A DNA stretch of 64,000 nucleotides, taken from IMG/VR virus record IMGVR_UViG_3300028536_000014, positions 62,001 through 126,000 of that record. One strand, given 5' to 3'. The translations under genes were made by a program, and so were the position numbers. Each line of letters starts with the position of its first letter. Position 1 is the stretch's first letter. The notes under the pieces are model-generated. The model did not search any database and was not told where the DNA came from. It was given only the letters and a program-made list of their open reading frames with translations. Shown here in pieces: positions 5,147 to 52,071 of the stretch.

Positions 5147-6358
5147 TTAGCGTTTGTTATTCGCTAAGAGCACGATACCTTTCGGTTCGTTCGCATTGTG
5201 ATAGGCTATCGCCGCTTCATCTCGGATGTTTATAGCAGCATTAACATCTCGATCATGGGTTTGATGACAGTGAGGACAGGTCCAAGTTCTTTCTGACAAC
5301 TTTAACTTACGATCAAGACGTTGTTGACAACTGCTACAAATATGACTTGAAGGGTAATAAGCATCCATAACGACTACAGAACAATGTCCAGATTCCTGGG
5401 CTTTATAGATCACGAAGGTCTTAAAGGTAGACCACGCTGCGTCTGAGATGTGTTTCGCTAATCGATAGTTTTTGACCATATTACTAGGCACAAGCGCTTC
5501 GAGTCCGATGACTTGGTTTTCGTCGACGAGGATTCGAGAGAGTTTGTGTAGATGGTCTTGACGTGCGTTAGCGATATGTTGGTGTATGGTAGAGACTTTA
5601 AGACAGGCTTTCTTGCGGTTATGGCTACCTTTGACTTTACGAGCTAAGGATTGTTGAGCCCGTTTAAGCTTTAAAGCGTATTTTTTAGTATGATGAGGGT
5701 TATCGATCTTGGTACCGTCTGAGAAAGTAAATAGAGACGTTAGACCTGCATCGATACCCGTAATTTTAGTACCTTTAGTAATATTAAATTCGTATTCACA
5801 AATAAAACAAACATAATACTTACCACTAGCTCTTTTAATTATAGTTAAAGAAGAAGGAGCTGATGGAAGTTCACGGTGCCATTCAATTTTAATAGGGTTA
5901 TCACATTTCGCTATGGTGAATTGACCATTTCTTATTTGAAAACCATCTCTCATTAAAGAGAATGTTTGTCGACCTTCTTTCTTTTTAAACCTAGGATACC
6001 CAATCCTCCGTCGGAAGAAATTAGAATAGGCTGTACCAAGATGTAACATCTCTTGCTGAAGGGCTGTAGCGATAGCTTCTTTTAACCATTCACAAATTGG
6101 GTCTGCTTTATAAATAGGAAGTCGTTTAACAAAATCATACCCGGTGGAGATAGGACGAGAAAGGTTAATAACCCCTTGTTCTTTTAAAGCTAGCCAGTTT
6201 TCATATTCTAGTTTAGCTTCTGATAATCCTCGATTAAAGACATATCGACAACATCCGAAGTTCTTAGCCAAGAATTCTTTCTGACTATCTGTAGGATATA
6301 TCCGAAAACAATAACCTTTTTTCATAATTGACGATATCCAATGTACTTCTACATACAA
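5147..6358 (-). mobile_element. tnpB: IS200/IS605-family RNA-guided endonuclease TnpB, no tnpA nearby
   Basis: N-terminal HTH (YCFRIYPT..Q...FGCCRYVFN), RuvC residues GIDAG, GLEAL and DRDVNAAINI, zinc finger CSSC...CPHC. Confidence 0.92.
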
Positions 6359-6532
6359 TATAGATACCAGTGAGATATAATTTTAGTGGTGCACTACGAT
6401 ACTCCGGAGTCCCATCCATATCGGTGGGTCGTCAGACGCACACGCGCAACGTCATGCTGTGTTTCCGTGTCTGACTAATGGAACTTCAGGTGATGTAAAA
6501 ACACTCATTATTGTATTCATTTGATTTTAGTC

Positions 6533-7135
6533 CTAAACATGTAGAATCGAATCCTCATTCTTTATAGACGTAATCGTATTAACACGTCTAAATTTTAGAC
6601 TGTAATGATTAAATCGACCATTAAGAATCATGTTGATTAAATCATAAATCCTATTATCATTACGATTAATAATATCGCCATTCTTATCAGTGATATCTTT
6701 TACATAAAAAGAATATCCATGAACTGTTGAATGACCATTATCAATACGAATACTACCACTCATCATCACGTGACAATTCAGTTTTAGATCTTCTTTGACA
6801 ATTTGGTTAAGTGTTCCAGATAGAGGTTCACCAACAGCTGTAAGCGTATTCTTATCGATAAGAATAGAACTGTAATTAGCATTCAAACTCAATCGCATAA
6901 ATTCAGATGAATTTTTCAATACGAATTTGAACTGTGGTAGATTCTCAGTTTGAAACCACAATATTTGATTATCGATTTTCATCGAGAACTGATAAAGTTG
7001 AATATCGGGATGAAGTCTATCAGTACGACTTACACTGCCGTCTTCAATAGCTTCATTTGTCAAAGTGATATCGAGAACATCTCGCATATCGTCAAACGGT
7101 AAAATGATCTTGTAGATTTTACTTTCGTCAGTCAT
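6533..7135 (-). CDS. Hypothetical protein
   Basis: 200-aa ORF. Confidence 0.55.
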   Translation of the reverse strand: MTDESKIYKIILPFDDMRDVLDITLTNEAIEDGSVSRTDRLHPDIQLYQFSMKIDNQILWFQTENLPQFKFVLKNSSEFMRLSLNANYSSILIDKNTLTAVGEPLSGTLNQIVKEDLKLNCHVMMSGSIRIDNGHSTVHGYSFYVKDITDKNGDIINRNDNRIYDLINMILNGRFNHYSLKFRRVNTITSIKNEDSILHV

Positions 7136-7147
7136 ACATTACTTTAT

Positions 7148-7654
7148 TTATTCAGGAATAAAGCGGGGTGGTTGTTTTTCTGATATACCGTCTGATGCTG
7201 TTGACCAACCATGATACCACATAAAAGCACAGAAGTTAGCAACATCAATAGGATCACCTTTTTCCATATGGTGACGAAGTTGTTCTCGATAGAGTTGTTC
7301 TCGATCAGGATTCATCCAACCTTCAGCAGGTTCTTTTCTACCTTCATACTCAACTTGAGCTTTATAAAGTTTCTTGGCCATAACAGCTGAAAACTGTAGA
7401 ACTAACTCCATAGTTTCTGAATTTAGTCCTATAGGAATTTCAACATGTCCAATGAGTCGGACAAGCTTATCTGTTCGATTGGTAAAAGTAACATCTTCAG
7501 GCCATTTTACAACAGATGACAATCTAGATGTATTTTCAACAAGACCTACAATCGGTGAAAAATCTACTATAGAAAGATCTCCTTGTACAAGTCTATCATC
7601 ATCCACATTTGTATGGTCATTTAGTTGTGATTCTGATTTTTCCGTTTCCGACAT
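7148..7654 (-). CDS. Hypothetical phage protein with KGDPxDVANF motif (MazG-like helical fold possible)
   Basis: LRHHMEKGDPIDVANFCAFMWY, a motif recurrent in phage proteins. Confidence 0.5.
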   Translation of the reverse strand: MSETEKSESQLNDHTNVDDDRLVQGDLSIVDFSPIVGLVENTSRLSSVVKWPEDVTFTNRTDKLVRLIGHVEIPIGLNSETMELVLQFSAVMAKKLYKAQVEYEGRKEPAEGWMNPDREQLYREQLRHHMEKGDPIDVANFCAFMWYHGWSTASDGISEKQPPRFIPE

Positions 7655-9131: not shown

Positions 9132-9234
9132 ATTGTCGAAACGATTCATGCTTTTCTCTTGAGTAATTATACAAACTTTATACTCAAGAAAACTCTATCA
9201 AGATATAATTAATGAGAGTTTTCTTGAATACTGA

Positions 9235-10030
9235 GCGACAGAAAATCTGATCTTCTCCTCCAAATTACGGCACGACCACTACTCACCTCGGCCGAAGTGA
9301 AGGTGTGGTTCATCCGATTGTTGAAAGAGAAGATCGGGTCGGTTCCTCCTCACTTATGATTTTGATCCCAATCAGCAATACATCTTCCGTTAGACGGACG
9401 ACATACTGATTTACTGACAGAGTATCTCACTAAGAATATTGGATTCTTCTAACAGGACTGTAAAGACAATCCATGGTTTTTTACAACGGTGATCGTTCGC
9501 CACAGCTGTTAACAAAGTTAAATTCGCTGCCGACCTTTGGCATTTTCTGGCAAAGCCAGAGCCCCTGTACCGGATGTTCATTTACCAAGTTACCAGGCTG
9601 AATCTGATCAGGGAACCATCAGCTGAATGGCTATTGATCAGACTATGAGAACTCATTAAACAAACTGTTGGCATACTAGTCTAATCCAACATAACGATAA
9701 TAGGGCTAAATACAAACGATTGCTCGGAGCATGTGGATCTCCACTGATGTTGTCGGGCATGACCACCGAATGCATTCGGCTAAGTCTTGGGATCGTGGAT
9801 TCGTACACTTACTGCTACCACTCAGTTGGCGCAAGTTTTAGTGCACTTACCACACCGTAAAGTACAACTCGAGGTACCGCTACAGGCATCGCCTGCAGAC
9901 CCGTAGGTCTGCAGGCGATCCGACGTCTACAAGACCGAACAAGAGATCTCGTAGTTTTTAACCCTAATCCCCACACATTGTAGAAAGTAATGCGCCGGGA
10001 AAAGGGAATATTAGATAGCCGAGTTATCGA
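9235..10030 (-). ncRNA. Candidate large structured ncRNA of unknown class (~0.8 kb)
   Basis: No ORF of 60 aa or more; 14-bp stem with cUACGg loop (9888-9919) and a cUUCGg loop (~9290) read on the minus strand; long hairpin at 9180-9232. Confidence 0.5.
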
Positions 10031-10040
10031 CTCTCCTTAA

Positions 10041-10538: not shown

Positions 10539-10576
10539 ATATCCTTAAAACAGAAAAGATACTGGACTAAAAAAAT

Positions 10577-10652
10577 TGATCCTTTCCCCCGCAACAATCA
10601 AGGCGCTGTGAGAACTCGTCTCGGGCCAGGTTGTATCTAAGAGGAAAGGATC
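10577..10652 (-). repeat. Hairpin element, copy 1, carrying the 21-mer CTGGCCCGAGACGAGTTCTCA
   Basis: Exact 21-nt match at 10609-10629 and 12598-12618; closed by GATCCTTTCC/GGAAAGGATC. Confidence 0.8.
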
Positions 10653-10895
10653 CTGTCTTTTTCATTGCTGCATTGATCCTTCACTTCTGATCTCTGCAAA
10701 CAGATGTGTGCACACACATCGTCATTTTCATTTGTTGTCAGCACGGTGCATAGGTGAGTTCACGTGCGCATATCATTTCTTCCTGTCATAAGCTACCTAC
10801 TTGTTATTTCCACAAGCCGGATTTTTCAGTAGCCCAAACGTGTTTAGTATCCCTAAAATATTAAACACAACCTTCCGCTATTGGCCCTACAAAAC

Positions 10896-11041
10896 TGGTC
10901 AGTCACGGTGTGATTCGAACACACAGCCAAATTGGTCCTTACGCCGAACACCCAATTTGGTACCAACTTTCCATTATCGATATCATGAGTCTCGATAACT
11001 TCTTTGCTAGTAACGTCTACCGTAATTCCGCCACGCGACTG
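10896..11041 (-). tRNA. Non-canonical 146-nt tRNA-Leu-like RNA with extended anticodon and variable arms
   Basis: Acceptor (C)AGTCGCG/CGTGACT(G), discriminator A, CCA; Leu-type D arm TGGCGGAATTACGGTAGACG; T arm GTGTG-TTCGAAT-CACAC. Confidence 0.7.
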
Positions 11042-11049
11042 TTTGAAAA

Positions 11050-11153
11050 TGGCGATCACTCTAGGATTCGAACCCAGCCCCTTTCCGATCGTGTTCAATA
11101 GGCTCTTTGTTTCCTATCGTTCCTATAGACCGAACTGCTTCATCCCAGTACTC
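11050..11153 (-). tRNA. Non-canonical tRNA-like RNA (104 nt), identity unclear
   Basis: T arm CTGGG-TTCGAAT-CCTAG, acceptor GAGTACT/AGTGATC (6 of 7 pairs), G-CCA end; no 7-nt anticodon loop. Confidence 0.55.
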
Positions 11154-11241
11154 GTCTTATACTCAATCAAAGATACTCTCTAGAATTCTCTCTGATCTTT
11201 CTTTGGTTTTCCTGTTCTCTTAGCTTAGTGACCATTGACTA

Positions 11242-11739: not shown

Positions 11740-11994
11740 CTAGTGTCCGTAATTACAACCGATCTTGGCTCTTTGACCATTCACTTCGATAATGGTATCG
11801 AAAATACCGCAACATCCTTCATCACGAGCTCTTTGATATTTATCCAAAGCAGCCTCGTCATTCAGATATGCGAATCGACGATTATCGATGCAGTGATCGT
11901 CCACATGTCTTTCCATCCACTCAAGAGCTTCTTCTTGAGTAGCAAAACTTCTTTCTTCTTCTCCGTCGGATGACGTGAAATCGACGATTGTCAT
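11740..11994 (-). CDS. Hypothetical acidic protein
   Basis: 84-aa ORF. Confidence 0.5.
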   Translation of the reverse strand: MTIVDFTSSDGEEERSFATQEEALEWMERHVDDHCIDNRRFAYLNDEAALDKYQRARDEGCCGIFDTIIEVNGQRAKIGCNYGH

Positions 11995-12216
11995 ATCGGA
12001 TTCCTTGGATGATGATAGTTAAGCTACTTCAAAAGCTTCGATATGCTTCGAAGAAATAGTCGCGATTAACGGAAAGAAATCAGGGTCCTTCCCTTCTTTG
12101 ATCCATTGTTTGTAAAACTTCTTTTTGAACCTATAGTTCTTCCATGGAACAGATAGATTGTAAAAGAACAAATTGACTTTCTTACGAAAGGTCATACATC
12201 ATCTTTTAATGTTAAG

Positions 12217-12290
12217 TGGTTGGAGGACTAGGACTCGAACCTAGATTAATGACGTCAAAGGACACCGTCCTACCATTAGACGATCCTCCA
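12217..12290 (-). tRNA. tRNA-Gln(UUG)
   Basis: U1-A72 acceptor TGGAGGA/TCCTCCA, anticodon loop CTTTGAC, CCA. Confidence 0.9.
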
Positions 12291-12566
12291 TCATAATCAC
12301 TTAATCATTAGAAAGAAAATAGGAACAGTTCCGGTTTCCAGGTAAAAACACAAACGTGTCATTTCATACTCCAATCAATAAACCCTTAGACGAGCACACG
12401 ATCACTACGCCTGGTATCACTGGTCCGAATGGGGTTGCAGGGGGGACCCATTCAGCTGAGGCGAAGTTTAACCAAATACCTTCATAATCCATAATTGTAA
12501 CAACGACATCATTAGAATTAGAAGGTTTTCATGAACGTGTGCTCCTCTAAAGATTCACATTAGAAG

Positions 12567-12643
12567 ACCCCTTTCATCATTAACGTCACTGGCACAATGA
12601 GAACTCGTCTCGGGCCAGCCGTCCTTATTTGACGAAAGGGGTC
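12567..12643 (-). repeat. Hairpin element, copy 2, carrying the 21-mer
   Basis: GACCCCTTTC/GAAAGGGGTC stem enclosing CTGGCCCGAGACGAGTTCTCA. Confidence 0.8.
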
Positions 12644-13268
12644 ATGCCACATGCAATATTGGTTTCAACTCCCTTTGAGCGCGATGCTCTCTGCAGAGTT
12701 CCACCATCGAAAGTGTACGAACACTCTCTCTTTCTGCTTTTTCAGCGTGCGGTTAATACACAAGTTAGGACTAGTTGGTTTTGAGTGCCGTAACACTCAC
12801 CTAGGTAGTCCTTGCTGGCTTATGCCAGTAGCCGCGTAACAAACAACACGGGTTTACAAATTATGACCCATATCGTTACGCGGCTATTCGGAGCCTAACG
12901 TCTTCATGTGAGGTATCTCCTCTTGTTGGCAGGTCAAAAGACTTCTCGTAAGAAGCCTGAACATGATGTCGGTGGCGAAAGGTAAGCGGTACCCTCGCAA
13001 CCTGTGACATCACACCTTTCTTACAACGTTTGCCCGAACGAGCTTATGGATTCTCCCCATCTGGCTCGGTGATCTTTCGATCTATTGCCGAAACAGTTCG
13101 GCATAACAACACGGCGGGCAGGTGCTCCTTAACGCCTTTCGGCATACCCTATCTCGAAAGATAGATCAGTCATTCAAGAACAAGAGCGGATCCTTGAATC
13201 AAGACGTAGTGATCGCCGATACCTCGGAGTATCGGTTTAGTTACCGTTAACGTCATACTACCATGCTA

Positions 13269-13360
13269 AGATCAGTGAAGGATGCTATTTCAAGGACGAC
13301 TCCACCGTAATTGGCATCACGGCTTCAAAGTCTCGCATCTATCCTACACATCAAAGATCC
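13269..13360 (-). rRNA. 23S rRNA L1-stalk (H76-H78)-like segment embedded in a phage ncRNA; not a complete rRNA
   Basis: TTGATGTGTAGGATAGATGCGAGACTTTGAAGCCGTGATGCCAATTACGGTGGAGTCGTCCTTGAAATAGCATC: 56 of 74 nt identical to the E. coli sequence as recalled, differences keep pairing. Confidence 0.85.
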
Positions 13361-14150
13361 GTTAAAGTTTCAACAGTACTAAACTAAACCGCGTGAAAGA
13401 AAACACGGGGCGTAACACCGCACCGAAAGAGGGTGAGTATGTTCGTATAGCCCCAGATCATGATCCGCATTCTGTTACCCCAGTCACGTAGGTTAGAGAA
13501 TAACACGAATCACGATTGTTTTCTTTTGTTTAGCGTTCCTGCTAACGATTGCATTGGGTTAGTCCCACGTCCACATTCTGGATGCTCATTTCCAGACTCA
13601 GTTTTCGATGGAGCTTTGGTAACATTCTTTTCGTTGACCTTACCATTTTGATAAGGCTAGAAGTAATAGCGACTTCAAAGAACATGTCTATTGATCAGTG
13701 TATCAAGCACAGACCGTTACGTTGGTCTGTGTTGAATCCCGCTCCAGTTTCCCGGCTACGGCTTCTCCCGTCGATGTTCACTTTTACGAAAAGAATTCAT
13801 TGCTTGGTATAAAGCTTGATGGTAATGGCTTCGCCAGTGTTTATACCACCTGCGCATGGACGATCTCTCCTCCACGACTCACCATTGTTACGAGGCATGC
13901 ATTTGCCCAACACCATTCTGCATTTACCAACCAATACATATATCTGACTTTTTTGATCAGATTAAACGATAATACAAGCACTCCATTAAGCACTCGCGTA
14001 GTGCTCAACAGGCTGCTTCCTCAGACGTAAATAGATCACAAGGTCTACATATCTGAATAGACAACTTGACTAGTCGTGGCCACAACCAATCCGTAGGGTT
14101 TGAATAGTTTCGAATGCCTTCGCTACTACCCCTTCGCAAATCACCCTTAG

Positions 14151-14211
14151 CTGTTATACTTATTTTAATGTTAAAATAAGTTTCGTCCCTTAAAGGACTC
14201 GTCAGTAACAG
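14151..14211 (-). ncRNA. Hammerhead ribozyme (type I)
   Basis: CTGTTA-CTGACGA-GTCC(TTTAAG)GGAC-GAA-ACTTATTTTAA(CA)TTAAAATAAGT-A-TAACAG; predicted cut after GUA, between 14157 and 14156. Confidence 0.9.
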
Positions 14212-14225
14212 TTTTATTCTACAAA

Positions 14226-14301
14226 TGGTGCCCCTGTCTGGTACCGAGCCAGATTCCCTGGCTTACAAAGCCAGACCTCATCCATTAAAGGCTTCAGGGG
14301 C
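14226..14301 (-). tRNA. tRNA-Thr(UGU), atypical T loop
   Basis: GCCCCTG/CAGGGGC acceptor, anticodon loop TTTGTAA, T loop CTCGGTA, CCA. Confidence 0.85.
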
Positions 14302-14308
14302 ATGTTTG

Positions 14309-14782
14309 TCAATTGACGATATTATTTCTCGTCTTGTATTCCTGAATAGCGGCGTTGATTTGATCGTCTGTCAGAAGAAGAACATCGACAATTGAAAAAT
14401 ACATGACGAGCGTTTCATCACCTGTGATTTCTCGTATTTCTTCAACGAAAATGCTATACTTGGCTGGTTCACCAGGAAACAAACCGACAATGATTTCGAG
14501 GCTCACGTTAGAATCATCACGAATCGTACCATCATCATTGGCTGGATACCAATCCAAGCGATACTCGGAGTCCTCATGACATCCAAGATCTTCTTTACCA
14601 TCGATGATCAGATCGAACTCATGTTCACCGAGTTCGACAGAACCAAGACCGTTCGGTTCAGAACTCAAAGCTTCGGTTATCTTGGCAACATATTGAGCGA
14701 AGCGAGCTTTCTCTCGAATGTTTTTCCGAGAATCTTTCTCTACTTCTTCTTCGTACTCTTCATCAAGTTCAGTCATGTTCAA
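14309..14782 (-). CDS. Hypothetical acidic protein
   Basis: 157-aa ORF. Confidence 0.55.
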   Translation of the reverse strand: MNMTELDEEYEEEVEKDSRKNIREKARFAQYVAKITEALSSEPNGLGSVELGEHEFDLIIDGKEDLGCHEDSEYRLDWYPANDDGTIRDDSNVSLEIIVGLFPGEPAKYSIFVEEIREITGDETLVMYFSIVDVLLLTDDQINAAIQEYKTRNNIVN

Positions 14783-15062: not shown

Positions 15063-15706
15063 CTTACCACTATAGCTTTCGCTACCATTAAGAAGTATTC
15101 AGCCTTCACTCTTATAGAGTTATTAACTCAGAGCTATTCCTTACTAACTTCTACATGTTTGTGGTCTGGACTGTACCTTAACCTTAGTTCCAACAGAACT
15201 TTTGATGACTCAGCTACACGGTTTCCCGGCTTTTTATCGAAGTTACTTCGCTAGTCAAAGAAATGCTAATTACTAGAATTAGATCATCGCAATGAAAACT
15301 TTAGGTTGTTGCCTACCAGTCTCTACACGTTTTCTTCTCAAGAACAGTCTGTGGAGATCTAATGTTCTATCCCGGTATCATTACTCCCCAACCATTTCTG
15401 GTCACCGGCTCACATCTACCATACGGTAGCTATTGAAGAATTTCGCTCGGTATTAGCATATGAACTGCAACAGACAACTCACTTAGCTTTCACCGACTTT
15501 GACAACATTCACCCTAGCCCTTACCCCGTTGATATTATCTCTGGACGATGATATCTCTATCACCTATTTATAATGGATGCTAGTTTATACGTCTTTCGAT
15601 TGAGTTGTTTCATGAGGGTAGTGAGAGCTTCAACTCACATAAGCTTTTATTCTTCCAACTCTGTTTTACCAACTCATTTTTCGTAGGTGCTCAAATTAAA
15701 GTACTT
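15063..15706 (-). ncRNA. Group I intron, ORF-less (644 nt), in the tRNA-Leu anticodon
   Basis: P1 CTT|AAG with TTTGAG (U.G at the splice site); core motifs AAAGTCGGTGAAAGCT, GCTAATACCGAG, GTAGAGACTG, AAGGTACAGTCC; terminal G. Confidence 0.88.
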
Positions 15707-34913: not shown

Positions 34914-35234
34914 TTAAGATCCCCAGAGTGTGATATTCCAAGTCCTGATATTCTTATCATCAGGAACACTATGATTAATACGAACGTGTTTCCATCCAGC
35001 GTTTGAATACCGGAAAACAAGTTCAAGCTGAACACCAATTGGGATTTCGTCCTCAGTAATCGGAACGACCCAGTATTTGATATCTTGATAAAGAGATACG
35101 TTATCTTTGATCCATTCCGTGCTAAACAAATGAGCATCGATCCTGGATTCCAATTTCGTAACGATGTCGTTCTCAACGATAGGTGAGTTAACGGACTTGA
35201 ATGACTGAATGACATATTCTCTTGACGTAGCCAT
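34914..35234 (-). CDS. Tandem paralogue family member
   Basis: IDAHL...EW...WVVPI...RYSNAGWKHV...W.I.LW. Confidence 0.6.
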   Translation of the reverse strand: MATSREYVIQSFKSVNSPIVENDIVTKLESRIDAHLFSTEWIKDNVSLYQDIKYWVVPITEDEIPIGVQLELVFRYSNAGWKHVRINHSVPDDKNIRTWNITLWGS

Positions 35235-35258
35235 ATAAGGCTCCTTATGAGTGATTGT

Positions 35259-35591
35259 TTATTCCGGTATATTACAACAGAGTTCGATGGTCCAGGTTTT
35301 CATTTCTTGTTCGTCGGAATTATATATTCTAACGAAATTCCAACCACTTTCTCCATATAAAACCGCTAGAGAATTTCTGACCTCTATACTGAGTTCACCC
35401 TGGAAACATAAAGTACAAACCATTCTTCCATTCAAAATATGAACGGCATGTTCGTCCAATTGGAGATGAAGTGAAATTTTGGATAAAGCGACTTCGATCA
35501 ACTCGATTGCGTAGTTCAAACACAATTCATGAACTTTCATTCCTTGTCGAAGAGGAATAGAAGCTAGAACTGAAGTAGGTGATGTTGGCAT
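35259..35591 (-). CDS. Tandem paralogue family member (divergent)
   Basis: LYGESGWNFVRI...WTIEL. Confidence 0.55.
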   Translation of the reverse strand: MPTSPTSVLASIPLRQGMKVHELCLNYAIELIEVALSKISLHLQLDEHAVHILNGRMVCTLCFQGELSIEVRNSLAVLYGESGWNFVRIYNSDEQEMKTWTIELCCNIPE

Positions 35592-35654
35592 GATAATTCT
35601 CCTGGTAATTTTTGTATCAACCTAGAACCAACTAGCTTCAACACAACACGTGGT

Positions 35655-36056
35655 TTAATCTTTCCAGACAACATAACCTGGAACTGGCCAAGAATATGTA
35701 ATCTTTCGATTGTACGGAGGAAGTGCTACTTCACCACGTTTGTGGATGAGAACGACGTCTACTTCGTTTTCAATAAATTGGAAAATACTACGAGCATAAG
35801 AGATATTAGGATATGAATCTGTTGCTCCAAGCCAATCGGCACGAGGGGCCGCCATTGGGTAGTTATCCGGATATTGGGATGGATTGACAATGAAGTCTTT
35901 AGCAACAATGGTCATACCAATTTCATCTAACATCGTAAGATATACACCGGTATCTGTTTCACCCGGATTAATAATACGTGTTACTCTCATTTCTTCCAAC
36001 AATTTTTTGTAATTCTCAGGAGTCTTTTCCATAAATGTTTCCTCTTGTTGTTTCAT
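35655..36056 (-). CDS. Hypothetical protein
   Basis: 133-aa ORF. Confidence 0.55.
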   Translation of the reverse strand: MKQQEETFMEKTPENYKKLLEEMRVTRIINPGETDTGVYLTMLDEIGMTIVAKDFIVNPSQYPDNYPMAAPRADWLGATDSYPNISYARSIFQFIENEVDVVLIHKRGEVALPPYNRKITYSWPVPGYVVWKD

Positions 36057-36086
36057 TAAAAAGATTTATGACGAATATAAAACAAA

Positions 36087-36118
36087 ACGGAGACCTAGGC
36101 CGAAACCTAGGTCTCCGT
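36087..36118 (-). terminator. Intrinsic terminator at the end of the intron-containing RNA
   Basis: acggagacctagg/cctaggtctccgt stem with TTTTGTTTT following on the minus strand. Confidence 0.7.
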
Positions 36119-36119
36119 A

Positions 36120-36593
36120 CTTGCCGTTGCTTAGAACAACATCGAACAAACATCTGACATATACTGATTACGACTAACGACCTATAACCACGAAAACGCA
36201 GATCGTGTCATTACAACCTTTACCAATAGGAGTCAGATATTCAAAACGCAGATCGCGTCGTTTGATCGAGTGTGATGATTTCTATACCAACTCACGGAGG
36301 TATAGCAGAACATTCATCACGATAGTGCCGATATTAACATACGAGTGAAGGATCGTTGATTTAACGCCCCAGTGCTTATATGTATCAATGAGCTAAGTTC
36401 TGTACCTTTCTATCCTACTCTAGTCCTAGTAAATCAAAGACACGGACTCTGGTTTCCCAGCTATCCCTTACCCTCGGAAGTATAACCCAATCTGCGCCTA
36501 TTAAGAGGACCAACAGCTCTAAGGGTTAACGTTTTGAAAGATTAATCAGTAGTTTTCACTACCGTCTAAGATTTTTGTTTCAAGGGAAAACAA
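36120..36593 (-). ncRNA. 3-prime exon of an unidentified large structured RNA
   Basis: ORF-free; hairpins such as GGTAGT-GAAA-ACTACT and CTGG-GAAA-CCAG; repeated CGATCTGCGTTTT. Confidence 0.55.
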
Positions 36594-37408
36594 CTACCAC
36601 TATAGCTTTCGCTACCAATAAAAAGCGTTCAATGTTTCACTCGTATTGAGTTATTAGCTCAACGTGCTATTATTTACTAACTTTACATGTTTGTGGTCTT
36701 GACTCTTTTAAGCATATAGCTCAGCTTCATCTCGCTAGAGGTTCTATTAGTTACTTGCTAGACTTACACTTGGTCTGATTCTTAAAGATTACTTCCGTCT
36801 GTCGGGAAAGATATGACTCTTTACTCCTAAGATTTCATCTATTCAGAAATAAGACTCTTCGCTTCCCGTCATCACTTTCACGCTGTATTAGGCGCTATTT
36901 AGCTTGTTGCCATTGAGTCTCTACACGTTCTAATCCAATTACCTGTTGTGCACATTTACTGTCACAACGCGGGTATAAACACGGTATATACATCACCGCA
37001 CTCGTTTAACCGATCAGTAATTCAGATTCGTTTCGCTCGGTATTAGCGTAGGATGGACCACTCATTCATTGAAGACTTTTTGTGTTCCCTATAGCTATAA
37101 CCGACTTTGACAACATTCACCAACATCTATATTAAGACATGATCGCCATGGAGACTAGGATTTCTCCGGTATTCCATATAGCTATTATCCATATCCTTCA
37201 GCTTGCTGAAATCACATTTCTCAAAGAAGACTGAGGGTCTGCTATTCAGTAGATGTTTATACGTCCTTTCGGATTGAGTTGTTTTCGCATTTTTAGATGG
37301 GGGTTCTCATACTTCCCCGGCAGCTCAGATTTAGGCTGAGTCCCAAACTTTTACCGTGCCGATTTTACCAACTCATTTTTCGTAGGTGCCCTTACATTAC
37401 ACGGTTAA
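36594..37408 (-). ncRNA. Group I intron, ORF-less (815 nt), paralogous to the tRNA-Leu intron
   Basis: Six shared blocks with 15063-15706; P1 TCT|TTA with TAAGGG; P7 GACTC/GAGTC; terminal G. Confidence 0.85.
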
Positions 37409-37820
37409 AGAAGTATTTCTACTCCCCAGTTCCTCAGGAACTGATGTCCTTTCCTCACCGTAAGTTCTTAAACAATGGACACTTTTGGCTGGTCAAAAAT
37501 TCACTTGTTCGTCAGACCATTATGGCATATACCTCACGATCGCCTGCAATTGAGAACAAGTATAGGAGAGTTTACAGTTCAGGAAGACGCAAAAAGGCGT
37601 CTCTCGTAACTGCTACAGAGGGCGAAAGGTCGACCCCAAACTCACAAACTTTAACAAACTAAAAATCTAAGTTTCGTTCGCACGACATAGGTCACCACGA
37701 CAATTGCGATATGTCGACTATTAAGATGATTCAGGCACGAAACACCACCCTTGACACAAGAGAACCAGATCGTGTTACCGGTTACTCCGTCTGAATTTGA
37801 ATTTATCAATAGCTTTCGCT
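37409..37820 (-). ncRNA. 5-prime exon of the unidentified large structured RNA (5-prime boundary uncertain)
   Basis: No minus-strand ORF; hairpins GGAGTA-GAAA-TACTTC, CAGTTCC/GGAACTG, GACGC/GCGTC, CTTGTTC/GAACAAG. Confidence 0.5.
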
Positions 37821-37847
37821 ACATGATGTATTAACTAACTAAATTTT

Positions 37848-38030
37848 CTATTTCATTAAACGGAAGTAAGAATATTCAGCTAGCATAACTGTTACAGCAA
37901 TGAGTGCTCCAGCTGTTATACATTGACCAATTGTTAAGCTTTGCAGCTTAAATAAAATAGCTGAAAGCAAGAAGATGATTACAACACCTTGTTGGTACAT
38001 CATCAGTTTTCCTTCAATCGTTCGATCCAT
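37848..38030 (-). CDS. Small two-TM membrane protein
   Basis: Two hydrophobic helices. Confidence 0.45.
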   Translation of the reverse strand: MDRTIEGKLMMYQQGVVIIFLLSAILFKLQSLTIGQCITAGALIAVTVMLAEYSYFRLMK

Positions 38031-38085
38031 ATTGAATTATTTACTTTATTATGAAGTAAATGTTTACAATAAGTATCGTTCTAAA

Positions 38086-38547
38086 CTACTGAATCGTGCT
38101 GGGATGGAACTCACGCCCCATGATTTTGGCAACTTTTTCCATTACCAAATCCATACTTTTGTTGGCTTTGACAACTTTTGCTTTGATTCGATTGAAATCT
38201 TCCAGCCGATTCTCTTCTTCGAATTTCTTGCGAGTTGCAGGATCAGTGATGAAATAGATACACGGTCCTTTCATCATGGAAGCTTCCATGCCCTTGCTGA
38301 CGATGTGAGAATTCTGGATCATCTTCTTCGTACACAACACCCTGTTCAGAATCGGTAATGCGTATTTTTCGAGACCATTAACAGAATACTCGTAGTCATA
38401 AGCAAACTTTTCGATCTCTTTGAGAGGATCGGCATCGACAGTGATTGTTTTTCCATCCGATAATCCAATTTCAACATTCATAGAGTTTCCTGATTGATAG
38501 AGAAAGAATATAAACCACCTATGCTCAATTAGAGTATATATAACCAA
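38086..38547 (-). CDS. Hypothetical protein (true start probably MNVEIG)
   Basis: ORF; promoter motif overlaps the annotated 5-prime extension. Confidence 0.5.
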   Translation of the reverse strand: MVIYTLIEHRWFIFFLYQSGNSMNVEIGLSDGKTITVDADPLKEIEKFAYDYEYSVNGLEKYALPILNRVLCTKKMIQNSHIVSKGMEASMMKGPCIYFITDPATRKKFEEENRLEDFNRIKAKVVKANKSMDLVMEKVAKIMGREFHPSTIQ

Positions 38548-38571
38548 AAACTTTTAACAAAGTGATTAGTT

Positions 38572-39051
38572 TTAAATAATGACCTGACTTGCTATTTTCA
38601 CAACATCAACAATCCGTTTTGAAACTGGATTTAAAACTAACGCAAGCATACCCATAGGAGCTATTGATGCGTTTTTATCCATATCAGAACAATCTTGAAA
38701 AGTTTGTCTATGAAAAATACATACCGTACTTGTTAGTACATTTTCACCTTGTGAGTTCATTGTGATAGATGGGAAATGAACAATAATAAAAAATTCATTT
38801 CCAAATCGTTCAACAAGTTCCATATAAAACATGTCTTTTGGAACATCTGAATAAAGTGAAAAAATCATGTTTTTAATACTTTCATAAAGATTAGCTATCC
38901 ACGAACGATAAGCAATACCAGTCATAGTGTTCATAATAAACAAAACGGCTTCATCACCAACATAGGCTTGCTTAGGTTCATTTAGTGATTGTATATTATC
39001 GAAGAAATCCATGATATTATTTCCTATCAGTTCAGACAATAAGGTATTCAT
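38572..39051 (-). CDS. Hypothetical protein
   Basis: 159-aa ORF. Confidence 0.5.
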   Translation of the reverse strand: MNTLLSELIGNNIMDFFDNIQSLNEPKQAYVGDEAVLFIMNTMTGIAYRSWIANLYESIKNMIFSLYSDVPKDMFYMELVERFGNEFFIIVHFPSITMNSQGENVLTSTVCIFHRQTFQDCSDMDKNASIAPMGMLALVLNPVSKRIVDVVKIASQVII

Positions 39052-50492: not shown

Positions 50493-50832
50493 CCTTACCT
50501 TCAAGTAGAATCGTTACTTCTACTCCGTGTTGATACACAGCTCTAACTTTCATTAGAAGAGGAGAACATATCACGATCTCTTTCGAGACCCCTTCCATTT
50601 CAGCTCACTTGAGCCTACTCCGCGCTACCGGATGTTCGTTGAACGTTTTTCTGACGGATCAGAAACTTCGCTGCGGATTATCCAATCTTCTTATTTGTTA
50701 CCATACCTGAGTGATTAGTTCAGCCATTGTTATATCACTATAACAACTTGGTATAAGAAGCTCTAAAGGACTTTCCCGACAATTAGAAAGGTGCTATTCA
50801 GATATCACTATCTGAAAGGACTAAAACTGTTA
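50493..50832 (-). ncRNA. Group I intron, ORF-less (340 nt), in the RNAP catalytic motif
   Basis: P1 GAT|TAA with TTAGTC; AATTGTCGGGAAA, AATCCGCAGC, GTTCAACGAACAT/ATGTTC (P7); terminal G. Confidence 0.92.
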
Positions 50833-52071
50833 ATCAGCGTTCATGCTCGTTGTGATCAAAATACTGACTCCAAATGTCAGATCCTTCGGATCGTTTTTAA
50901 CTCTTGGAATATAAACCTTCTGAATGGAACCTTGAAGCAAAGATGGAAATCGATTAAACAAGACTGGATAACGCCCATCTTTAGTATCAGAGATAATTTC
51001 TTTCAGATATTGATCAAGCAGTGGATGATAAATTTCAGTATGAGATAGAAGAAGTCCCACAGCGTCATTAATCAACATTCCACTTTTCTTGATAAGCTTG
51101 TTAATGAGCATCGGTCTGAAAATCGTTAAACCAACACCCCAAGGTATTTCAATTTCATCATATCGATGTGCGTCTGTTATCGAAGAGATAACAGCTCGTG
51201 CGGAATAATCGAATCGAGATCCACCGATATAATGTCGAAAGAGTCCAGACTTCTTAGCAACGATCGTCTTGAAATAACTGTCATAAAACTTACAGCTAAG
51301 AAGATACATCGCTCTAGCTGTACGATTTTCTTTAACAGAAACTGTTTGATTATGAAAATCTTTATCGATCGATACCAACATTTCGATAGCTTCAAGTGCT
51401 AACGGAACGGTACTGTCGATATAAGTGGCCAGAGATGTTTTCTCGATAACCAAGAGAGACTTATTCAGTAAAGGAATATAATCCGAGAACAAAATATCTT
51501 TCTTAACTGTTAAAAGATCAGCAAGATAATCTCGTCCTATTCCTTTGATTTTAAAATCTTTCAGACTCATCAAGAATTCGATGATCGATTGAAAATTCTG
51601 AACGAAGTAATTATATCCACGTTGAATACCAGCTTGTTCAATTTTATCTACGACATCAGGACGATTGATCTGAGGTGAATATGTTGTATCAGTTAACCAT
51701 CTCAAGATGCTAAATTTTGATTTGCTAAATCGATAATCCAACATAATCCAGATTATTGGTGACATCAATTTCTCAACACCAATAGGTTTTCGAAACCAAA
51801 CCAACGGTTCAATGGTGTTTTCAATCGCTGCACTGACGAGTGTGTCGCAGTGTTCACAAATCGTATTCTTACTGAATTCTCCTTTTGTCATTCCACATCG
51901 ACACGAAGGAAGAATTGTCACCATGTCACTTGAATAAGTTGTGGTGATTAATTGTTCAATACGTTCACGATCTTTCGTGGTAGTGTTAAGCAAGTCGTTT
52001 ATGATAATCGGAGGGTTCTTGAGCCCCTCGAACATCATATTGTTATCGATCAAACTCTGGATAATAGGCAC
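50833..52071 (-). CDS. Exon 1 of the non-virion RNA polymerase beta-prime-like subunit (phiKZ gp55-like); spliced product 473 aa
   Basis: Zinc finger CRCG...CEHC, K.GLFR..I.GSR.DYSARAVIS, FNRFPSL, ends SMNAD. Confidence 0.9.

What the first reader, a model, noticed from the sequence alone, without database searches (positions are those of the whole stretch)
12300..14156. Phage-encoded ~1.85 kb RNA built partly from 23S rRNA modules (L1 stalk and central protuberance/E-site region) but lacking the peptidyl-transferase centre
Seen: an interval with no credible coding-strand ORF between tRNA-Thr and tRNA-Gln. On the minus strand it opens with a hammerhead ribozyme, is dense in GNRA/UUCG hairpins, and carries an L1-stalk copy followed, in 23S order, by H83-H88-like motifs. 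The A2451 region (GGATAACAGG) and the A loop are not visible. Known: phages carry tRNAs, ribosomal proteins and large RNAs such as GOLLD and ROOL; I know of no phage RNA carrying structurally maintained rRNA domains. Inference: a ribosome-mimic RNA acting as a decoy or scaffold for L1 and central-protuberance proteins, or for factors and anti-phage effectors that bind the E site.
Basis: partly seen in the sequence, partly recalled or inferred. Interest (0 to 1): 0.95.

Follow-up and report, generated by a model that had tools for sequence, protein, structure and literature searches.

The report
Phage RNA carrying an L1-stalk copy
A nucleus-forming jumbo phage encodes a 1.87 kb non-coding RNA, cut out of a tRNA cluster, containing a structurally maintained free-standing copy of the ribosome's L1 stalk (the arm that grips the elbow of departing tRNAs); similar copies sit in the tRNA arrays of many other large phages, and I found no paper describing them.

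Summary
Window 12291-14156 (minus strand) has no coding potential under any stop-codon reading. It lies between tRNA-Thr and tRNA-Gln and opens with a complete type I hammerhead that would cut between 14157 and 14156. At 13270-13359 it holds a genuine L1-stalk domain (23S H76-H78; Rfam 63.6 bits, E 2e-16).

The claimed H83-H88 / central-protuberance modules are not supported. Only two short collinear 23S-like strings remain: a 14/14 match to E. coli 2329-2342 and a 17/19 match to 2768-2787. The peptidyl-transferase centre, A loop, P loop and sarcin-ricin loop are absent. It is not GOLLD or ROOL. The whole RNA has no homologue apart from an identical contig.

New here: free-standing L1-stalk modules occur in about 16 other phage or metagenome lineages and in several CPR bacteria, none inside a 23S gene. 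The helices covary strongly (88.8% paired; 20 of 23 pairs changed on both sides). In 10 phage lineages the module lies inside or beside a tRNA array, always on the tRNA strand.

Best reading: a stable RNA processed from the tRNA transcript whose L1 domain offers an off-ribosome docking site for tRNA elbows and/or protein uL1. The function is inferred, not shown.

The parts
14226..14301 (-). tRNA-Thr (anticodon UGU), with CCA encoded; the upstream boundary of the unit
   Evidence: ARAGORN; sequence
14152..14226 (-). Type I (RAGATH-1-like) hammerhead ribozyme directly after the tRNA. The predicted self-cleavage between 14157 and 14156 would create the 5' end of the large RNA
   Evidence: Rfam sub-threshold hits of 34.8 and 23.4 bits. 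Complete core and three stems found by my pattern scan, unique among all sequences scanned. Read directly. Cleavage not tested
12291..14156 (-). The 1866-nt non-coding RNA. Its 5' end would come from hammerhead cleavage and its 3' end from RNase P cutting at the 5' end of tRNA-Gln; both ends are inferred
   Evidence: No ORF under any code. GC 0.45-0.49 against 0.35-0.43 in the flanks. Folding z-scores -4.7, -3.1 and -9.9. No Rfam family other than the LSU local hit
13270..13359 (-). L1-stalk domain (23S H76-H78).
- H76: 13349-13359 with 13270-13280.
- H77: 13335-13339 with 13281-13285.
- 3-bp helix: 13330-13332 with 13298-13300.
- H78: 13316-13323 with 13304-13311.
- T-loop strands: 13340-13348 and 13286-13297.
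- Equivalents of G2112 and A2169 (the tRNA-elbow stacking pair): G13347 and A13290
   Evidence: Rfam LSU_rRNA_bacteria 63.6 bits, E 2e-16. Model R1 103.9 bits. Covariation across 20 extraribosomal copies. E. coli numbering mapped. Role of G2112-A2169 from PMC5309774
13235..13384 (-). Predicted mounting of the stalk. A 15-bp helix (13370-13384 with 13235-13250) encloses the L1 domain and a small hairpin (13254-13265). This gives a three-way junction with the topology of H75/H76/H79
   Evidence: Minimum-free-energy folds only. No covariation is available, so this is inference
12814..12827 (-). Hairpin UGGC-AUAA-GCCA(GC), identical over 14 nt to E. coli 23S 2329-2342 (domain V, H84/H85 region)
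   Evidence: 0 of 200 shuffles in the collinear partition; 13 of 200 against the whole 23S. Weak
12591..12618 (-). 28-nt element CUGGCCCGAGACGAGUUCUCAUUGUGCC. It is repeated at 10602-10629 and resembles 23S 2768-2787 (the 3' strand of H94) in 17 of 19 positions
   Evidence: Repeat family D2. Alignments and shuffles. Meaning unknown
12291..12912 (-). The 3' third of the RNA, its most strongly structured part, with perfect helices of 12-14 bp
   Evidence: z = -9.9 against dinucleotide shuffles. Helix list
12217..12290 (-). tRNA-Gln (anticodon UUG). Its 5' processing would define the 3' end of the large RNA
   Evidence: ARAGORN and Rfam tRNA, 59 bits

Best explanation
The interval is a gene for a stable non-coding RNA of 1866 nt, transcribed with the tRNA island of a phiKZ-like (chimallin-encoding) jumbo phage. 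The hammerhead that follows tRNA-Thr cuts itself and frees the 5' end. RNase P cutting in front of tRNA-Gln frees the 3' end.

About 90 nt in the middle fold as a complete, free-standing L1 stalk (H76-H78, with its two interdigitated T-loops), mounted on a long helix. The rest is a lineage-specific structured scaffold.

Proposed mechanism (inferred): off the ribosome, the L1 domain presents the same surface that in the E site stacks on the G19-C56 pair of the tRNA elbow and binds protein uL1. The RNA would therefore dock folded tRNAs or pre-tRNAs, probably as an RNA-uL1 particle. It could act as a holder, chaperone or shield for the tRNAs made from the same array.

Shown: the non-coding nature, the hammerhead motif, the L1 fold and its maintenance by compensatory change, the recurrence of the module, and its linkage to tRNA arrays.
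Inferred: the ends of the transcript, ligand binding, and the biological purpose.
For: - Non-coding.
- Phage identity: chimallin, PhiKZ major capsid protein and an RNA polymerase subunit.
- Hammerhead with the cut at 14157/14156.
- L1 domain.
- The module is a conserved family outside rRNA genes. Twenty extraribosomal copies give 88.8% paired cells, 20 of 23 pairs with changes on both sides, 0 of 500 shuffles reaching the covariation score, and 36-49% pairing in slid controls.
- None of the host contigs has other 23S similarity. True rRNA records were recognised as such by the same test (L008, L041).
- The 3' half of the module (UGGAG.C.....UG..AUA) was invariant in the first set, although the search pattern covered only the 5' half.
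- G2112 and A2169, the tRNA-stacking pair (PMC5309774), are kept in the window copy.
- Linkage to tRNAs: in 10 phage lineages the module lies in or next to a tRNA array, always on the tRNA strand. In one group it ends about 40 nt before tRNA-Arg(ACG); in a Saccharibacteria genome it ends about 10 nt before tRNA-Trp.
- The interdigitated T-loop motif is the known RNA device for docking tRNA elbows in the L1 stalk, RNase P and T-boxes (PMC4810234).
Against: - No homologue of the whole RNA exists apart from an identical contig. About 95% of the RNA therefore has no comparative support, and its unity as one transcript is unproven.
- There are no expression data.
- Binding of tRNA to an isolated L1 stalk is not established, to my knowledge.
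- In 8 of the 20 copies the G2112 position is U or A, and A2169 is G in 4. The stacking platform is therefore not strictly conserved.
- Six or so lineages show no tRNA within the few kb available.
- Placement in tRNA arrays may only reflect shared processing, as for other stable phage RNAs.
- The 5' and most 3' core nucleotides were imposed by my search patterns in the second set, so their invariance there is not independent evidence.
Confidence: 0.45

Rival explanations
1. uL1 sponge or regulator only. The domain binds free ribosomal protein uL1, as the L11-operon leader and archaeal L1 mRNAs do, and titrates it. That would disturb autoregulation of rplKA, or yield L1-poor ribosomes, or simply use uL1 to stabilise the RNA. 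tRNA is not a ligand.
For: - The H77/H78 region that uL1 recognises is present, and its helices are maintained.
- L1 binds the same motif in rRNA and mRNA, mainly through its domain I (PMC2175363).
- Three megaphage loci also carry a look-alike of the uL11-binding H43 hairpin. This would fit 'sponges for stalk proteins'.
- One CPR copy lies in front of rpsL-rpsG.
Against: - Known uL1 regulatory sites are minimal H77/H78 mimics of 36-49 nt. Here the entire stalk, with both T-loops and H76, is kept.
- The window copy is not next to any ribosomal protein gene, and none was found in 54 ORFs scanned.
- H77 base pairs vary freely among copies.
- The strong same-strand linkage to tRNA arrays is not predicted by this reading.
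Confidence: 0.2
2. Decaying relic. The phage once captured part of a host 23S gene (domains V-VI). The interval is what remains, and the L1 stalk is merely the slowest part to erode. It has no function.
For: The L1 stalk, the 14-mer (E. coli 2329-2342) and the 2768-2787-like string lie in 23S order. There is no homologue with which to show purifying selection on the rest.
Against: - The L1 domain carries compensated, not random, changes.
- The same module recurs in about 16 other phage or metagenome lineages that have no other rRNA remnants, and it covaries strongly.
- The interval has a dedicated ribozyme at its exact 5' end.
- Its structure signal exceeds that of coding controls, especially in the non-rRNA-like 3' third (z -9.9).
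- Phage genomes rarely keep 1.9 kb of junk.
Confidence: 0.1
3. Decoy for a factor or anti-phage effector that recognises the L1 stalk or E site. The free stalk would soak up a host protein that would otherwise act on ribosomes.
For: A complete, exposed stalk domain is maintained. Phage RNAs acting as molecular mimics against defence systems are known (papers listed, e.g. PMC3475682).
Against: I know of no effector that targets the L1 stalk, and none turned up in the literature searches. This reading does not explain the placement in tRNA arrays or the copies in CPR bacteria.
Confidence: 0.1
4. A multi-module ribosome mimic. The RNA reproduces the L1 stalk plus the H83-H88 / central-protuberance region and assembles several ribosomal proteins.
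For: A 14/14 hairpin match to 23S 2329-2342, flanked by hairpins. A 17/19 match to 2768-2787.
Against: - There is no significant alignment to 23S outside the L1 stalk. The best local score is reached by 13 of 200 shuffles, and the stretch between the L1 stalk and the 14-mer is at chance, 99 of 200.
- Rfam's LSU model aligned only H76-H78.
- Spacing differs greatly from 23S: 443 nt against 133 nt, and 196 nt against 426 nt.
- The other phage L1 RNAs have no such strings.
Confidence: 0.05
5. Artefact: an assembly chimera with host rRNA, or an unrecognised protein gene or intron.
For: Phage records do sometimes contain host rRNA (L008; L041; the records listed).
Against: - Only 90 nt are rRNA-like, at 77-81% identity, with compensated changes.
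- The sequence is identical in a second record, Ga0137416_10000001.
- No ORF under any code.
- No intron, GOLLD or ROOL match at gathering score. The sub-range E-value scan also listed none, but it missed the known L1 hit.
Confidence: 0.01

Closest known systems
L1 stalk of 23S rRNA (helices H76-H78)
   Same: The helices, both T-loop strands and the G2112/A2169 equivalents are the same. Rfam aligns it to model positions 2126-2215 at 63.6 bits. The predicted three-way mounting resembles H75/H76/H79.
   Different: It is not part of a 23S gene: there is no peptidyl-transferase centre, A loop, P loop or sarcin-ricin loop. H76 has 11 bp rather than about 18. H77 is rewritten by compensatory changes. 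It is encoded by a phage between tRNAs.
uL1-binding autoregulatory mRNA sites (bacterial L11-operon leader; archaeal L1 operon mRNA)
   Same: These are extraribosomal RNAs that imitate the uL1 site of 23S (PMC2175363).
   Different: They are minimal 36-49 nt mimics of H77/H78 placed in front of ribosomal protein genes. Here the whole stalk is kept, inside a 1.87 kb non-coding RNA with no ribosomal protein gene nearby.
Interdigitated T-loop modules of T-box Stem I and of the RNase P specificity domain
   Same: They use the same structural device, which docks the tRNA elbow (PMC4810234). Like them, the phage module sits next to its presumed tRNA ligands.
   Different: Those are thought to be convergent and share no sequence with the L1 stalk. 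The phage module is a sequence homologue of the L1 stalk. The whole-window Rfam gathering scan found no T-box or RNase P, and I did not look for a specifier or catalytic partner.
GOLLD and ROOL (large structured RNAs of phages and prophages, often beside tRNAs)
   Same: These are also large, ORF-free, highly structured phage RNAs in a tRNA neighbourhood (from my knowledge of those families).
   Different: Neither Rfam family matches at gathering score in the whole window. A sub-range E-value scan also listed neither, but that mode missed the known L1 hit, so it is weak evidence. At 1866 nt this RNA is much longer than either, and it contains an rRNA domain, which they are not known to have.
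Stable small RNAs encoded within the phage T4 tRNA gene cluster (species 1 and 2), from memory
   Same: These are non-tRNA stable RNAs co-transcribed and processed with phage tRNAs, of unknown function.
   Different: They are far smaller and have no known rRNA-like domain. This comparison was not tested here.
Type I / RAGATH-1 hammerhead ribozymes
   Same: The catalytic core and three-stem layout are the same, and the best Rfam hits are these two families.
   Different: Scores are below both gathering thresholds. It is used here as a 5'-end-defining device directly after a tRNA.

Membership tests
23S rRNA L1-stalk fold (H76-H78) | Three helices in the H76/H77/H78 arrangement, supported by covariation | tested here: met
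   Rfam local alignment. 88.8% of cells paired and 20 of 23 pairs changed on both sides across 21 sequences; slid controls gave 36-49%
23S rRNA L1-stalk fold (H76-H78) | Conserved T-loop strands (UAGGAUA ... GGAG.C ... UUGAAAUA) and the G2112-A2169 platform | tested here: met
   Present in the window copy (G13347, A13290). The 3' strand was invariant in a set found with a pattern covering only the 5' half. Role taken from PMC5309774
Bacterial 23S rRNA gene (functional large-subunit rRNA) | Embedded in a full 23S with the peptidyl-transferase centre, A and P loops and sarcin-ricin loop | tested here: not met
   Only model positions 2126-2215 align. The motifs are absent. There is no other significant similarity to 23S, 16S or 5S
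Hammerhead ribozyme, type I | CUGANGA ... GAAA core, three stems, and a UH cleavage site | tested here: met
   Sequence read; pattern scan
Hammerhead ribozyme, type I | Score at or above the Rfam gathering threshold | tested here: not met
   RAGATH-1-hammerhead 34.8 against 56.3; Hammerhead_1 23.4 against 34
Hammerhead ribozyme, type I | Self-cleavage activity | not testable with these tools
   Needs in vitro transcription of window 14140-14230(-)
GOLLD / ROOL large RNAs | Match to the Rfam covariance models | tested here: not met
   No hit at gathering score in the whole window. No hit at E up to 10 in 11800-14700, but that mode also missed the known L1 hit, so it is weak evidence
uL1-binding autoregulatory leader | Lies in the 5' leader of a uL11/uL1 (or other ribosomal protein) operon | tested here: not met
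   The flanks are tRNAs and ORFan genes. No ribosomal protein was found among 54 ORFs of the window
uL1-binding autoregulatory leader | Binds uL1 | not testable with these tools
   Needs a gel shift with purified uL1
tRNA-elbow-docking RNAs (T-box Stem I, RNase P S-domain) | Interdigitated T-loop platform | tested here: met
   Inherited from the L1-stalk fold (PMC4810234)
tRNA-elbow-docking RNAs (T-box Stem I, RNase P S-domain) | A second tRNA contact (specifier-anticodon pairing or a catalytic domain) at ruler distance | not tested
   No T-box or RNase P match in the whole-window Rfam gathering scan. No homologues are available to look for a conserved specifier
Group I / group II introns | Match to the Rfam intron models or to conserved catalytic cores | tested here: not met
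   No hit in this interval. The window's one group I intron is at 50541-50852

The most novel reading that the evidence does not exclude
Large phages (jumbo and megaphages), and some CPR bacteria, carry a previously undescribed class of free-standing ribosomal-RNA domains. These are complete L1 stalks, and in some megaphages also a look-alike of the uL11-binding H43 hairpin of the GTPase-associated centre. They are encoded inside tRNA arrays and work in trans, away from the ribosome, on the ligands of those stalks (tRNA elbows, uL1/uL11, or factors that read them). The window's 1.87 kb RNA would be the largest and most elaborate member, with its own ribozyme for 5' end formation.
Probability: 0.4. 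Interest if true: 0.9.

Novelty: new variant of a known kind. Interest (0 to 1): 0.8.

Why it matters
rRNA mimicry is known from short mRNA leaders that bind single ribosomal proteins. The interdigitated T-loop platform is known in three RNAs only: the L1 stalk, RNase P and T-boxes. A complete, covarying L1 stalk living outside the ribosome, repeatedly placed in phage tRNA arrays, would be a fourth context for that device. It would also be the first case of a virus encoding a ribosomal RNA domain.

It offers a direct handle on why large phages invest in tRNA islands, for example tRNA protection, handling or sensing during infection. It suggests that ribosome stalk elements can work as portable modules. 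It also provides compact natural RNAs (about 90-110 nt) for binding and structural studies.

If the module binds uL1, it would instead be a viral way to tap or disturb the supply of ribosomal proteins.

The copies in CPR bacteria raise a separate question: are those L1 stalks regulatory, or are they supplied to the ribosome in trans?

Tried and rejected
1. GOLLD, ROOL, group I/II introns, RNase P, T-box, tmRNA. No Rfam hit in the interval.
   - Caveat: Rfam's 'evalue' mode on sub-ranges failed to return even the known L1 hit. I do not use it as a negative for LSU sub-domains.
2. Homologues of the whole RNA.
   - INPHARED blastn found only rRNA-contaminated records.
   - The flanking proteins are ORFans and retrieve only the source contig.
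   - Viral and metagenome pattern scans retrieve only the source contig and an identical contig.
3. Other rRNA modules in the RNA.
   - k-mer, Smith-Waterman and chained-match tests against Salmonella and E. coli 23S, 16S and 5S.
   - Fuzzy searches for the peptidyl-transferase centre, A loop, P loop, sarcin-ricin loop and H69 gave two loose hits. These are GUGAUACCAGGC at RNA position 1737 and a 12/15 H69-like string at 1278. I judge both to be chance: they are not collinear, the wrong fold is predicted, and eight motifs were tested.
4. Coding under recoded stops: rejected.
5. A second L1 module in the window: none.
6. Motif M inside the RNA: none.
7. A cultured phage with the module. The only candidate, Paenibacillus phage Pd_22F, turned out to hold a full 23S plus 5S, so it is host rRNA.
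8. Sigma-70 promoters and intrinsic terminators: not above chance.
9. Hammerheads next to the other L1 modules: none by my strict pattern.
11. I did not build a covariance model of 23S H80-H88, because only a few closely related 23S sequences were in hand. That test remains open.
Full report
**What the window is.** The window is part of IMGVR_UViG_3300028536_000014, a 244.7 kb contig. An identical stretch is present in Ga0137416_10000001. It encodes a chimallin (E 1.7e-24), a PhiKZ-type major capsid protein fragment, a multisubunit RNA polymerase domain and a SNF2 helicase. It is therefore a nucleus-forming, phiKZ-like jumbo phage. It has no close relative among deposited phage genomes.

**The interval.**
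- ARAGORN places tRNA-Thr(tgt) at 14226-14301 and tRNA-Gln(ttg) at 12217-12290, both on the minus strand. They belong to an island that also holds tRNA-Leu, tRNA-Met and tRNA-Lys.
- No minus-strand ORF between the two tRNAs exceeds 55 aa.
- Each minus-strand frame has 33-43 stops, of all three kinds. Recoding any one stop codon gives nothing longer than 153 codons on either strand.
- GC is 0.45-0.49 here, against 0.35-0.43 around it.
- Against dinucleotide shuffles, the three 622-nt thirds fold with z = -4.7, -3.1 and -9.9 on the minus strand. Five coding controls give -1.0 to -3.9.
- GNRA/UNCG tetraloops closed by at least 4 bp number 6, against 2.0 expected; 5 of 500 shuffles reach that.

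The interval is a non-coding, structured RNA gene on the minus strand.

**The 5' end.** A textbook type I hammerhead follows tRNA-Thr directly: UGUUA-CUGACGA-GUCC..GGAC-GAAA-C UUAUUUU..AAAAUAAG-UA|UAACA.
- Rfam's closest families are RAGATH-1-hammerhead (34.8 bits) and Hammerhead_1 (23.4 bits), both below gathering.
- A strict pattern for the core plus three stems finds this one site and no other in the window plus the roughly 30 other distinct loci fetched by then.
- The cut falls between 14157 and 14156.
- The 3' end would be made by RNase P at the 5' end of tRNA-Gln (inference). The resulting RNA is 1866 nt.

**The L1 stalk.**
- Rfam's bacterial LSU model aligns positions 2126-2215 to 13359-13270 at 63.6 bits, E 2e-16, with every posterior at the maximum.
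- H77 is rewritten from GGUGG/CCACC to GAUGC/GCAUC, and the 3-bp helix from GGC/GCC to GAC/GUC. H78 is different but fully paired.
- Mapped to E. coli numbering, the equivalents of G2112 and A2169 are kept as G13347 and A13290. This pair stacks on G19-C56 of the tRNA elbow (PMC5309774).
- Folding of the surroundings predicts that the 11-bp H76 sits with a small hairpin inside a 15-bp closing helix. That is a three-way junction with H75/H76/H79 topology. It is a prediction only.
- My covariance model finds no second copy in the 64 kb.

**The other claimed rRNA modules.** I compared the RNA with Salmonella and E. coli rRNAs.
- Outside the stalk, the best local alignment is a 14-mer, TGGCATAAGCCAGC (12814-12827), identical to E. 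coli 2329-2342. It is reached by 13 of 200 shuffles against the whole 23S, and by 0 of 200 if only the collinear downstream parts are compared.
- A 17/19 match of 12600-12618 to E. coli 2768-2787 is reached by 2 of 200 shuffles in its collinear partition.
- The stretch between the stalk and the 14-mer is at chance, 99 of 200.
- The spacings differ from 23S: 443 nt against 133 nt, and 196 nt against 426 nt.
- Motifs of the peptidyl-transferase centre, A loop, P loop and sarcin-ricin loop are absent.

The RNA therefore contains one rRNA domain. At most it also holds two short strings, in 23S order, which may be the last traces of an ancestral capture of domains V-VI. The 'H83-H88 / central protuberance' description is not supported. 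A dedicated covariance model for H80-H88 was not built, and Rfam's E-value mode proved unreliable for this purpose because it missed the known L1 hit.

**Relatives of the whole RNA.** There are none. Flanking proteins are ORFans. Scans of IMG/VR, JGI metagenomes and GTDB genomes with L1-based patterns, and a scan with the 21-nt repeat, return only the source contig and its identical twin.

**The L1 module as a family.**
- The pattern scans uncovered L1-stalk modules that are not in 23S genes.
- IMG/VR contigs with one: 190.9, 116.8/58.6, 42.8, 412.8/409.5, 104.7/104.9, 74.8, 205.1, 119.4/69.8, 194.2, 294.9, 143.1, 205.4 and 108.7 kb.
- Short metagenome contigs with one: L010/L019 and L017.
- CPR genomes with one: Moraniibacteriota (between rmlD and rpsL-rpsG), Nomurabacteria and Saccharibacteria (about 10 nt before tRNA-Trp) (contexts).
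- None of these loci shows any other 23S similarity.
- The same checks recognised true rRNA in L008, and probably in L024 and L035. They also recognised it in the Paenibacillus phage Pd_22F record, which holds a full 23S plus 5S.
- In an alignment of 20 extraribosomal modules plus E. coli, 88.8% of cells pair and 20 of 23 pairs show changes on both sides. No shuffle in 500 reaches the covariation score, and sliding the partners drops pairing to 36-49% (first set).
- H77 and H78 are 96% paired, with up to six pair types per position.
- In the first set, found with a pattern covering only the 5' half, the 3' strand UGGAG.C.....UG..AUA was invariant.

This is a maintained fold, not debris.

**Link to tRNAs.**
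- In 10 phage lineages the module lies inside or beside a tRNA array, and in all 13 loci with a tRNA nearby it is on the tRNA strand.
- In L025, L026, L028 and L036 it lies between tRNA-Arg(UCU) and tRNA-Arg(ACG), ending about 40 nt before the latter.
- In L029 it lies between tRNA-Val and tRNA-Tyr, and in L031 between tRNA-Pro and tRNA-Ser.
- It lies before tRNA-Val in L030/L032 and before tRNA-Leu in L033.
- It lies after tRNA-Gln in L034, after tRNA-Leu and tRNA-Met in L037, and after tRNA-Thr in L017.
- The ORF-free RNA around it ranges from about 0.4 kb to about 2 kb. It shares no sequence between groups except within close relatives.
- Each module closes on its own H76-like stem of 6-15 bp.

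The window's RNA is the longest of these and, by my pattern, the only one with a hammerhead.

**Mechanism.** The interdigitated T-loop platform of the L1 stalk is one of three known RNA devices that dock the flat face of the tRNA elbow. The authors of that review expected more examples (PMC4810234). The stalk is also the binding site of uL1, which recognises the same motif in rRNA and in its regulatory mRNAs (PMC2175363).
- Keeping the whole stalk, rather than the 36-49 nt uL1 mini-site, argues that the three-dimensional head is what matters. The placement among tRNA genes on their strand argues that tRNA is at least one of the ligands.
- I therefore favour a processed stable RNA, or RNA-uL1 particle, that docks tRNA or pre-tRNA elbows off the ribosome. 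I put this at about 0.45.
- What that achieves is open. It could be folding or processing help, storage, or shielding of phage tRNAs from host nucleases.
- The main rival is uL1 titration alone (0.2).
- Lesser rivals are a functionless relic (0.1) and a decoy for an unknown stalk-binding factor (0.1).

Weak points:
- No expression or binding data exist.
- No comparative support exists for the other 95% of the RNA.
- The G2112 position is U or A in 8 copies.
- tRNA-array placement could simply reflect shared processing.

**Novelty.** Seven full-text searches found nothing on phage-encoded L1-stalk or rRNA-domain copies. They covered the L1 stalk with phage, jumbo phage and mimic, interdigitated T-loops, huge phages with rRNA fragments, and ribosomal leaders. 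Rfam 15 has no family for them other than the LSU model itself. The library is incomplete, so prior description cannot be excluded.

Noticed in passing
window 15568-15704(-) and 37250-37403(-); also L011 2083-2241(-), L017 2945-3110(+), L031 5676-5840(+) and 1200-1316(+), L037 5145-5341(+): A conserved structured element, 'motif M'. Its layout is GCAYC-NNCG-AAAAAU-[7-bp strand]-GGUA ... variable insert ... AA-[7-bp strand]-AAYC-GAAAG-NCGN-UAAAAC. Eight of its 11 predicted pairs change on both sides. The window has two copies sharing an exact 24-mer. In four other phages it lies 200-540 nt upstream of the L1 module on the same strand. No Rfam family matches at gathering score in the window, and its function is unknown.
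   Followed up: partly
window 10598-10632(-), with a related copy at 12591-12618(-): A 28-nt repeat (89% identical between copies). The 10.6 kb copy aligns over 36 nt to E. coli 23S 2764-2800 (the 3' strand of H94 and beyond), reached by 0 of 200 shuffles. It lies in another ORF-poor stretch, inside a 19-nt inverted repeat. It could be a second rRNA-derived element or a strand able to pair with 23S 2630-2643.
   Followed up: partly
window about 9133-10040(-) and 10540-11240(-): Two further ORF-poor stretches in the tRNA island. The second contains tRNA-like T-arm/acceptor ends (GGGUUCGAAUCCUAG..., GUGUUCGAAUCACACC...GACCA) that ARAGORN does not call. The first has a 19/22 match (9252-9273) to 23S 1681-1702, which is not significant (15 of 200 shuffles).
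   Followed up: no
window about 35000-38800(-): The richest stretch of the window for GNRA/UNCG hairpins (7-9 per 1866 nt, against a median of 2). It has no minus-strand ORF of 120 aa or more between 36056 and 38086. It is probably another large non-coding RNA region, and it contains motif M copy 2.
   Followed up: no
L026 4045-4076(-), L036 4219-4248(-), L028 about 6862-6929(-): Three megaphage loci that carry the L1 module also carry a look-alike of the H43 hairpin of the GTPase-associated centre (the uL11-binding region, E. coli 1057-1088). It lies next to tRNA-Leu and shows a compensated change in L028 (GGCU/AGCC becomes GGAU/GUCC). The H44 part diverges.
   Followed up: partly
L016 = L023 (Ca. 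Moraniibacteriota CP175956.1), L021 (Ca. Nomurabacteria), L022 (Ca. Saccharibacteria), L018 (unknown organism, between pgk and a HIT gene): Free-standing L1-stalk modules occur in CPR bacterial genomes, far from any 23S sequence. Contexts: between rmlD and rpsL-rpsG; near an RNase J-like gene; and about 10 nt before tRNA-Trp, downstream of a class II aminoacyl-tRNA synthetase. Whether their 23S genes still have H76-H78 could not be checked.
   Followed up: partly
window 5147-7654(-): A TnpB (IS605 OrfB / Cas12f-like) gene at 5147-6358 lies next to a 200-aa ORF (6533-7135) that matches only residues 189-365 of the PhiKZ major capsid protein. The capsid gene seems split or interrupted.
   Followed up: no
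window 50541-50852(-): A group I intron (Rfam 59.5 bits) with large insertions, just downstream of the ORF at 50830-52071.
   Followed up: no
L017 1697-1740 and 2843-2880 (+): Two copies of a roughly 37-nt element (..UAAGUGCUUUCUAACGAGAGUAUUUA..) in the non-coding stretches that follow tRNA-Thr and precede the L1 module.
   Followed up: no
L041 (Paenibacillus phage Pd_22F, MZ092003.1, record 82209-85116): This deposited 'complete phage genome' contains a full-length 23S and a 5S rRNA gene, annotated only as small hypothetical proteins. It is either host DNA in the record or a genuine capture.
   Followed up: partly
Rfam tool: In 'evalue' mode on a sub-range of the window, the 63.6-bit LSU hit on the L1 stalk is not returned, although it is in 'gathering' mode on the whole window. 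Negative results for the large rRNA models in that mode should not be trusted.
   Followed up: yes
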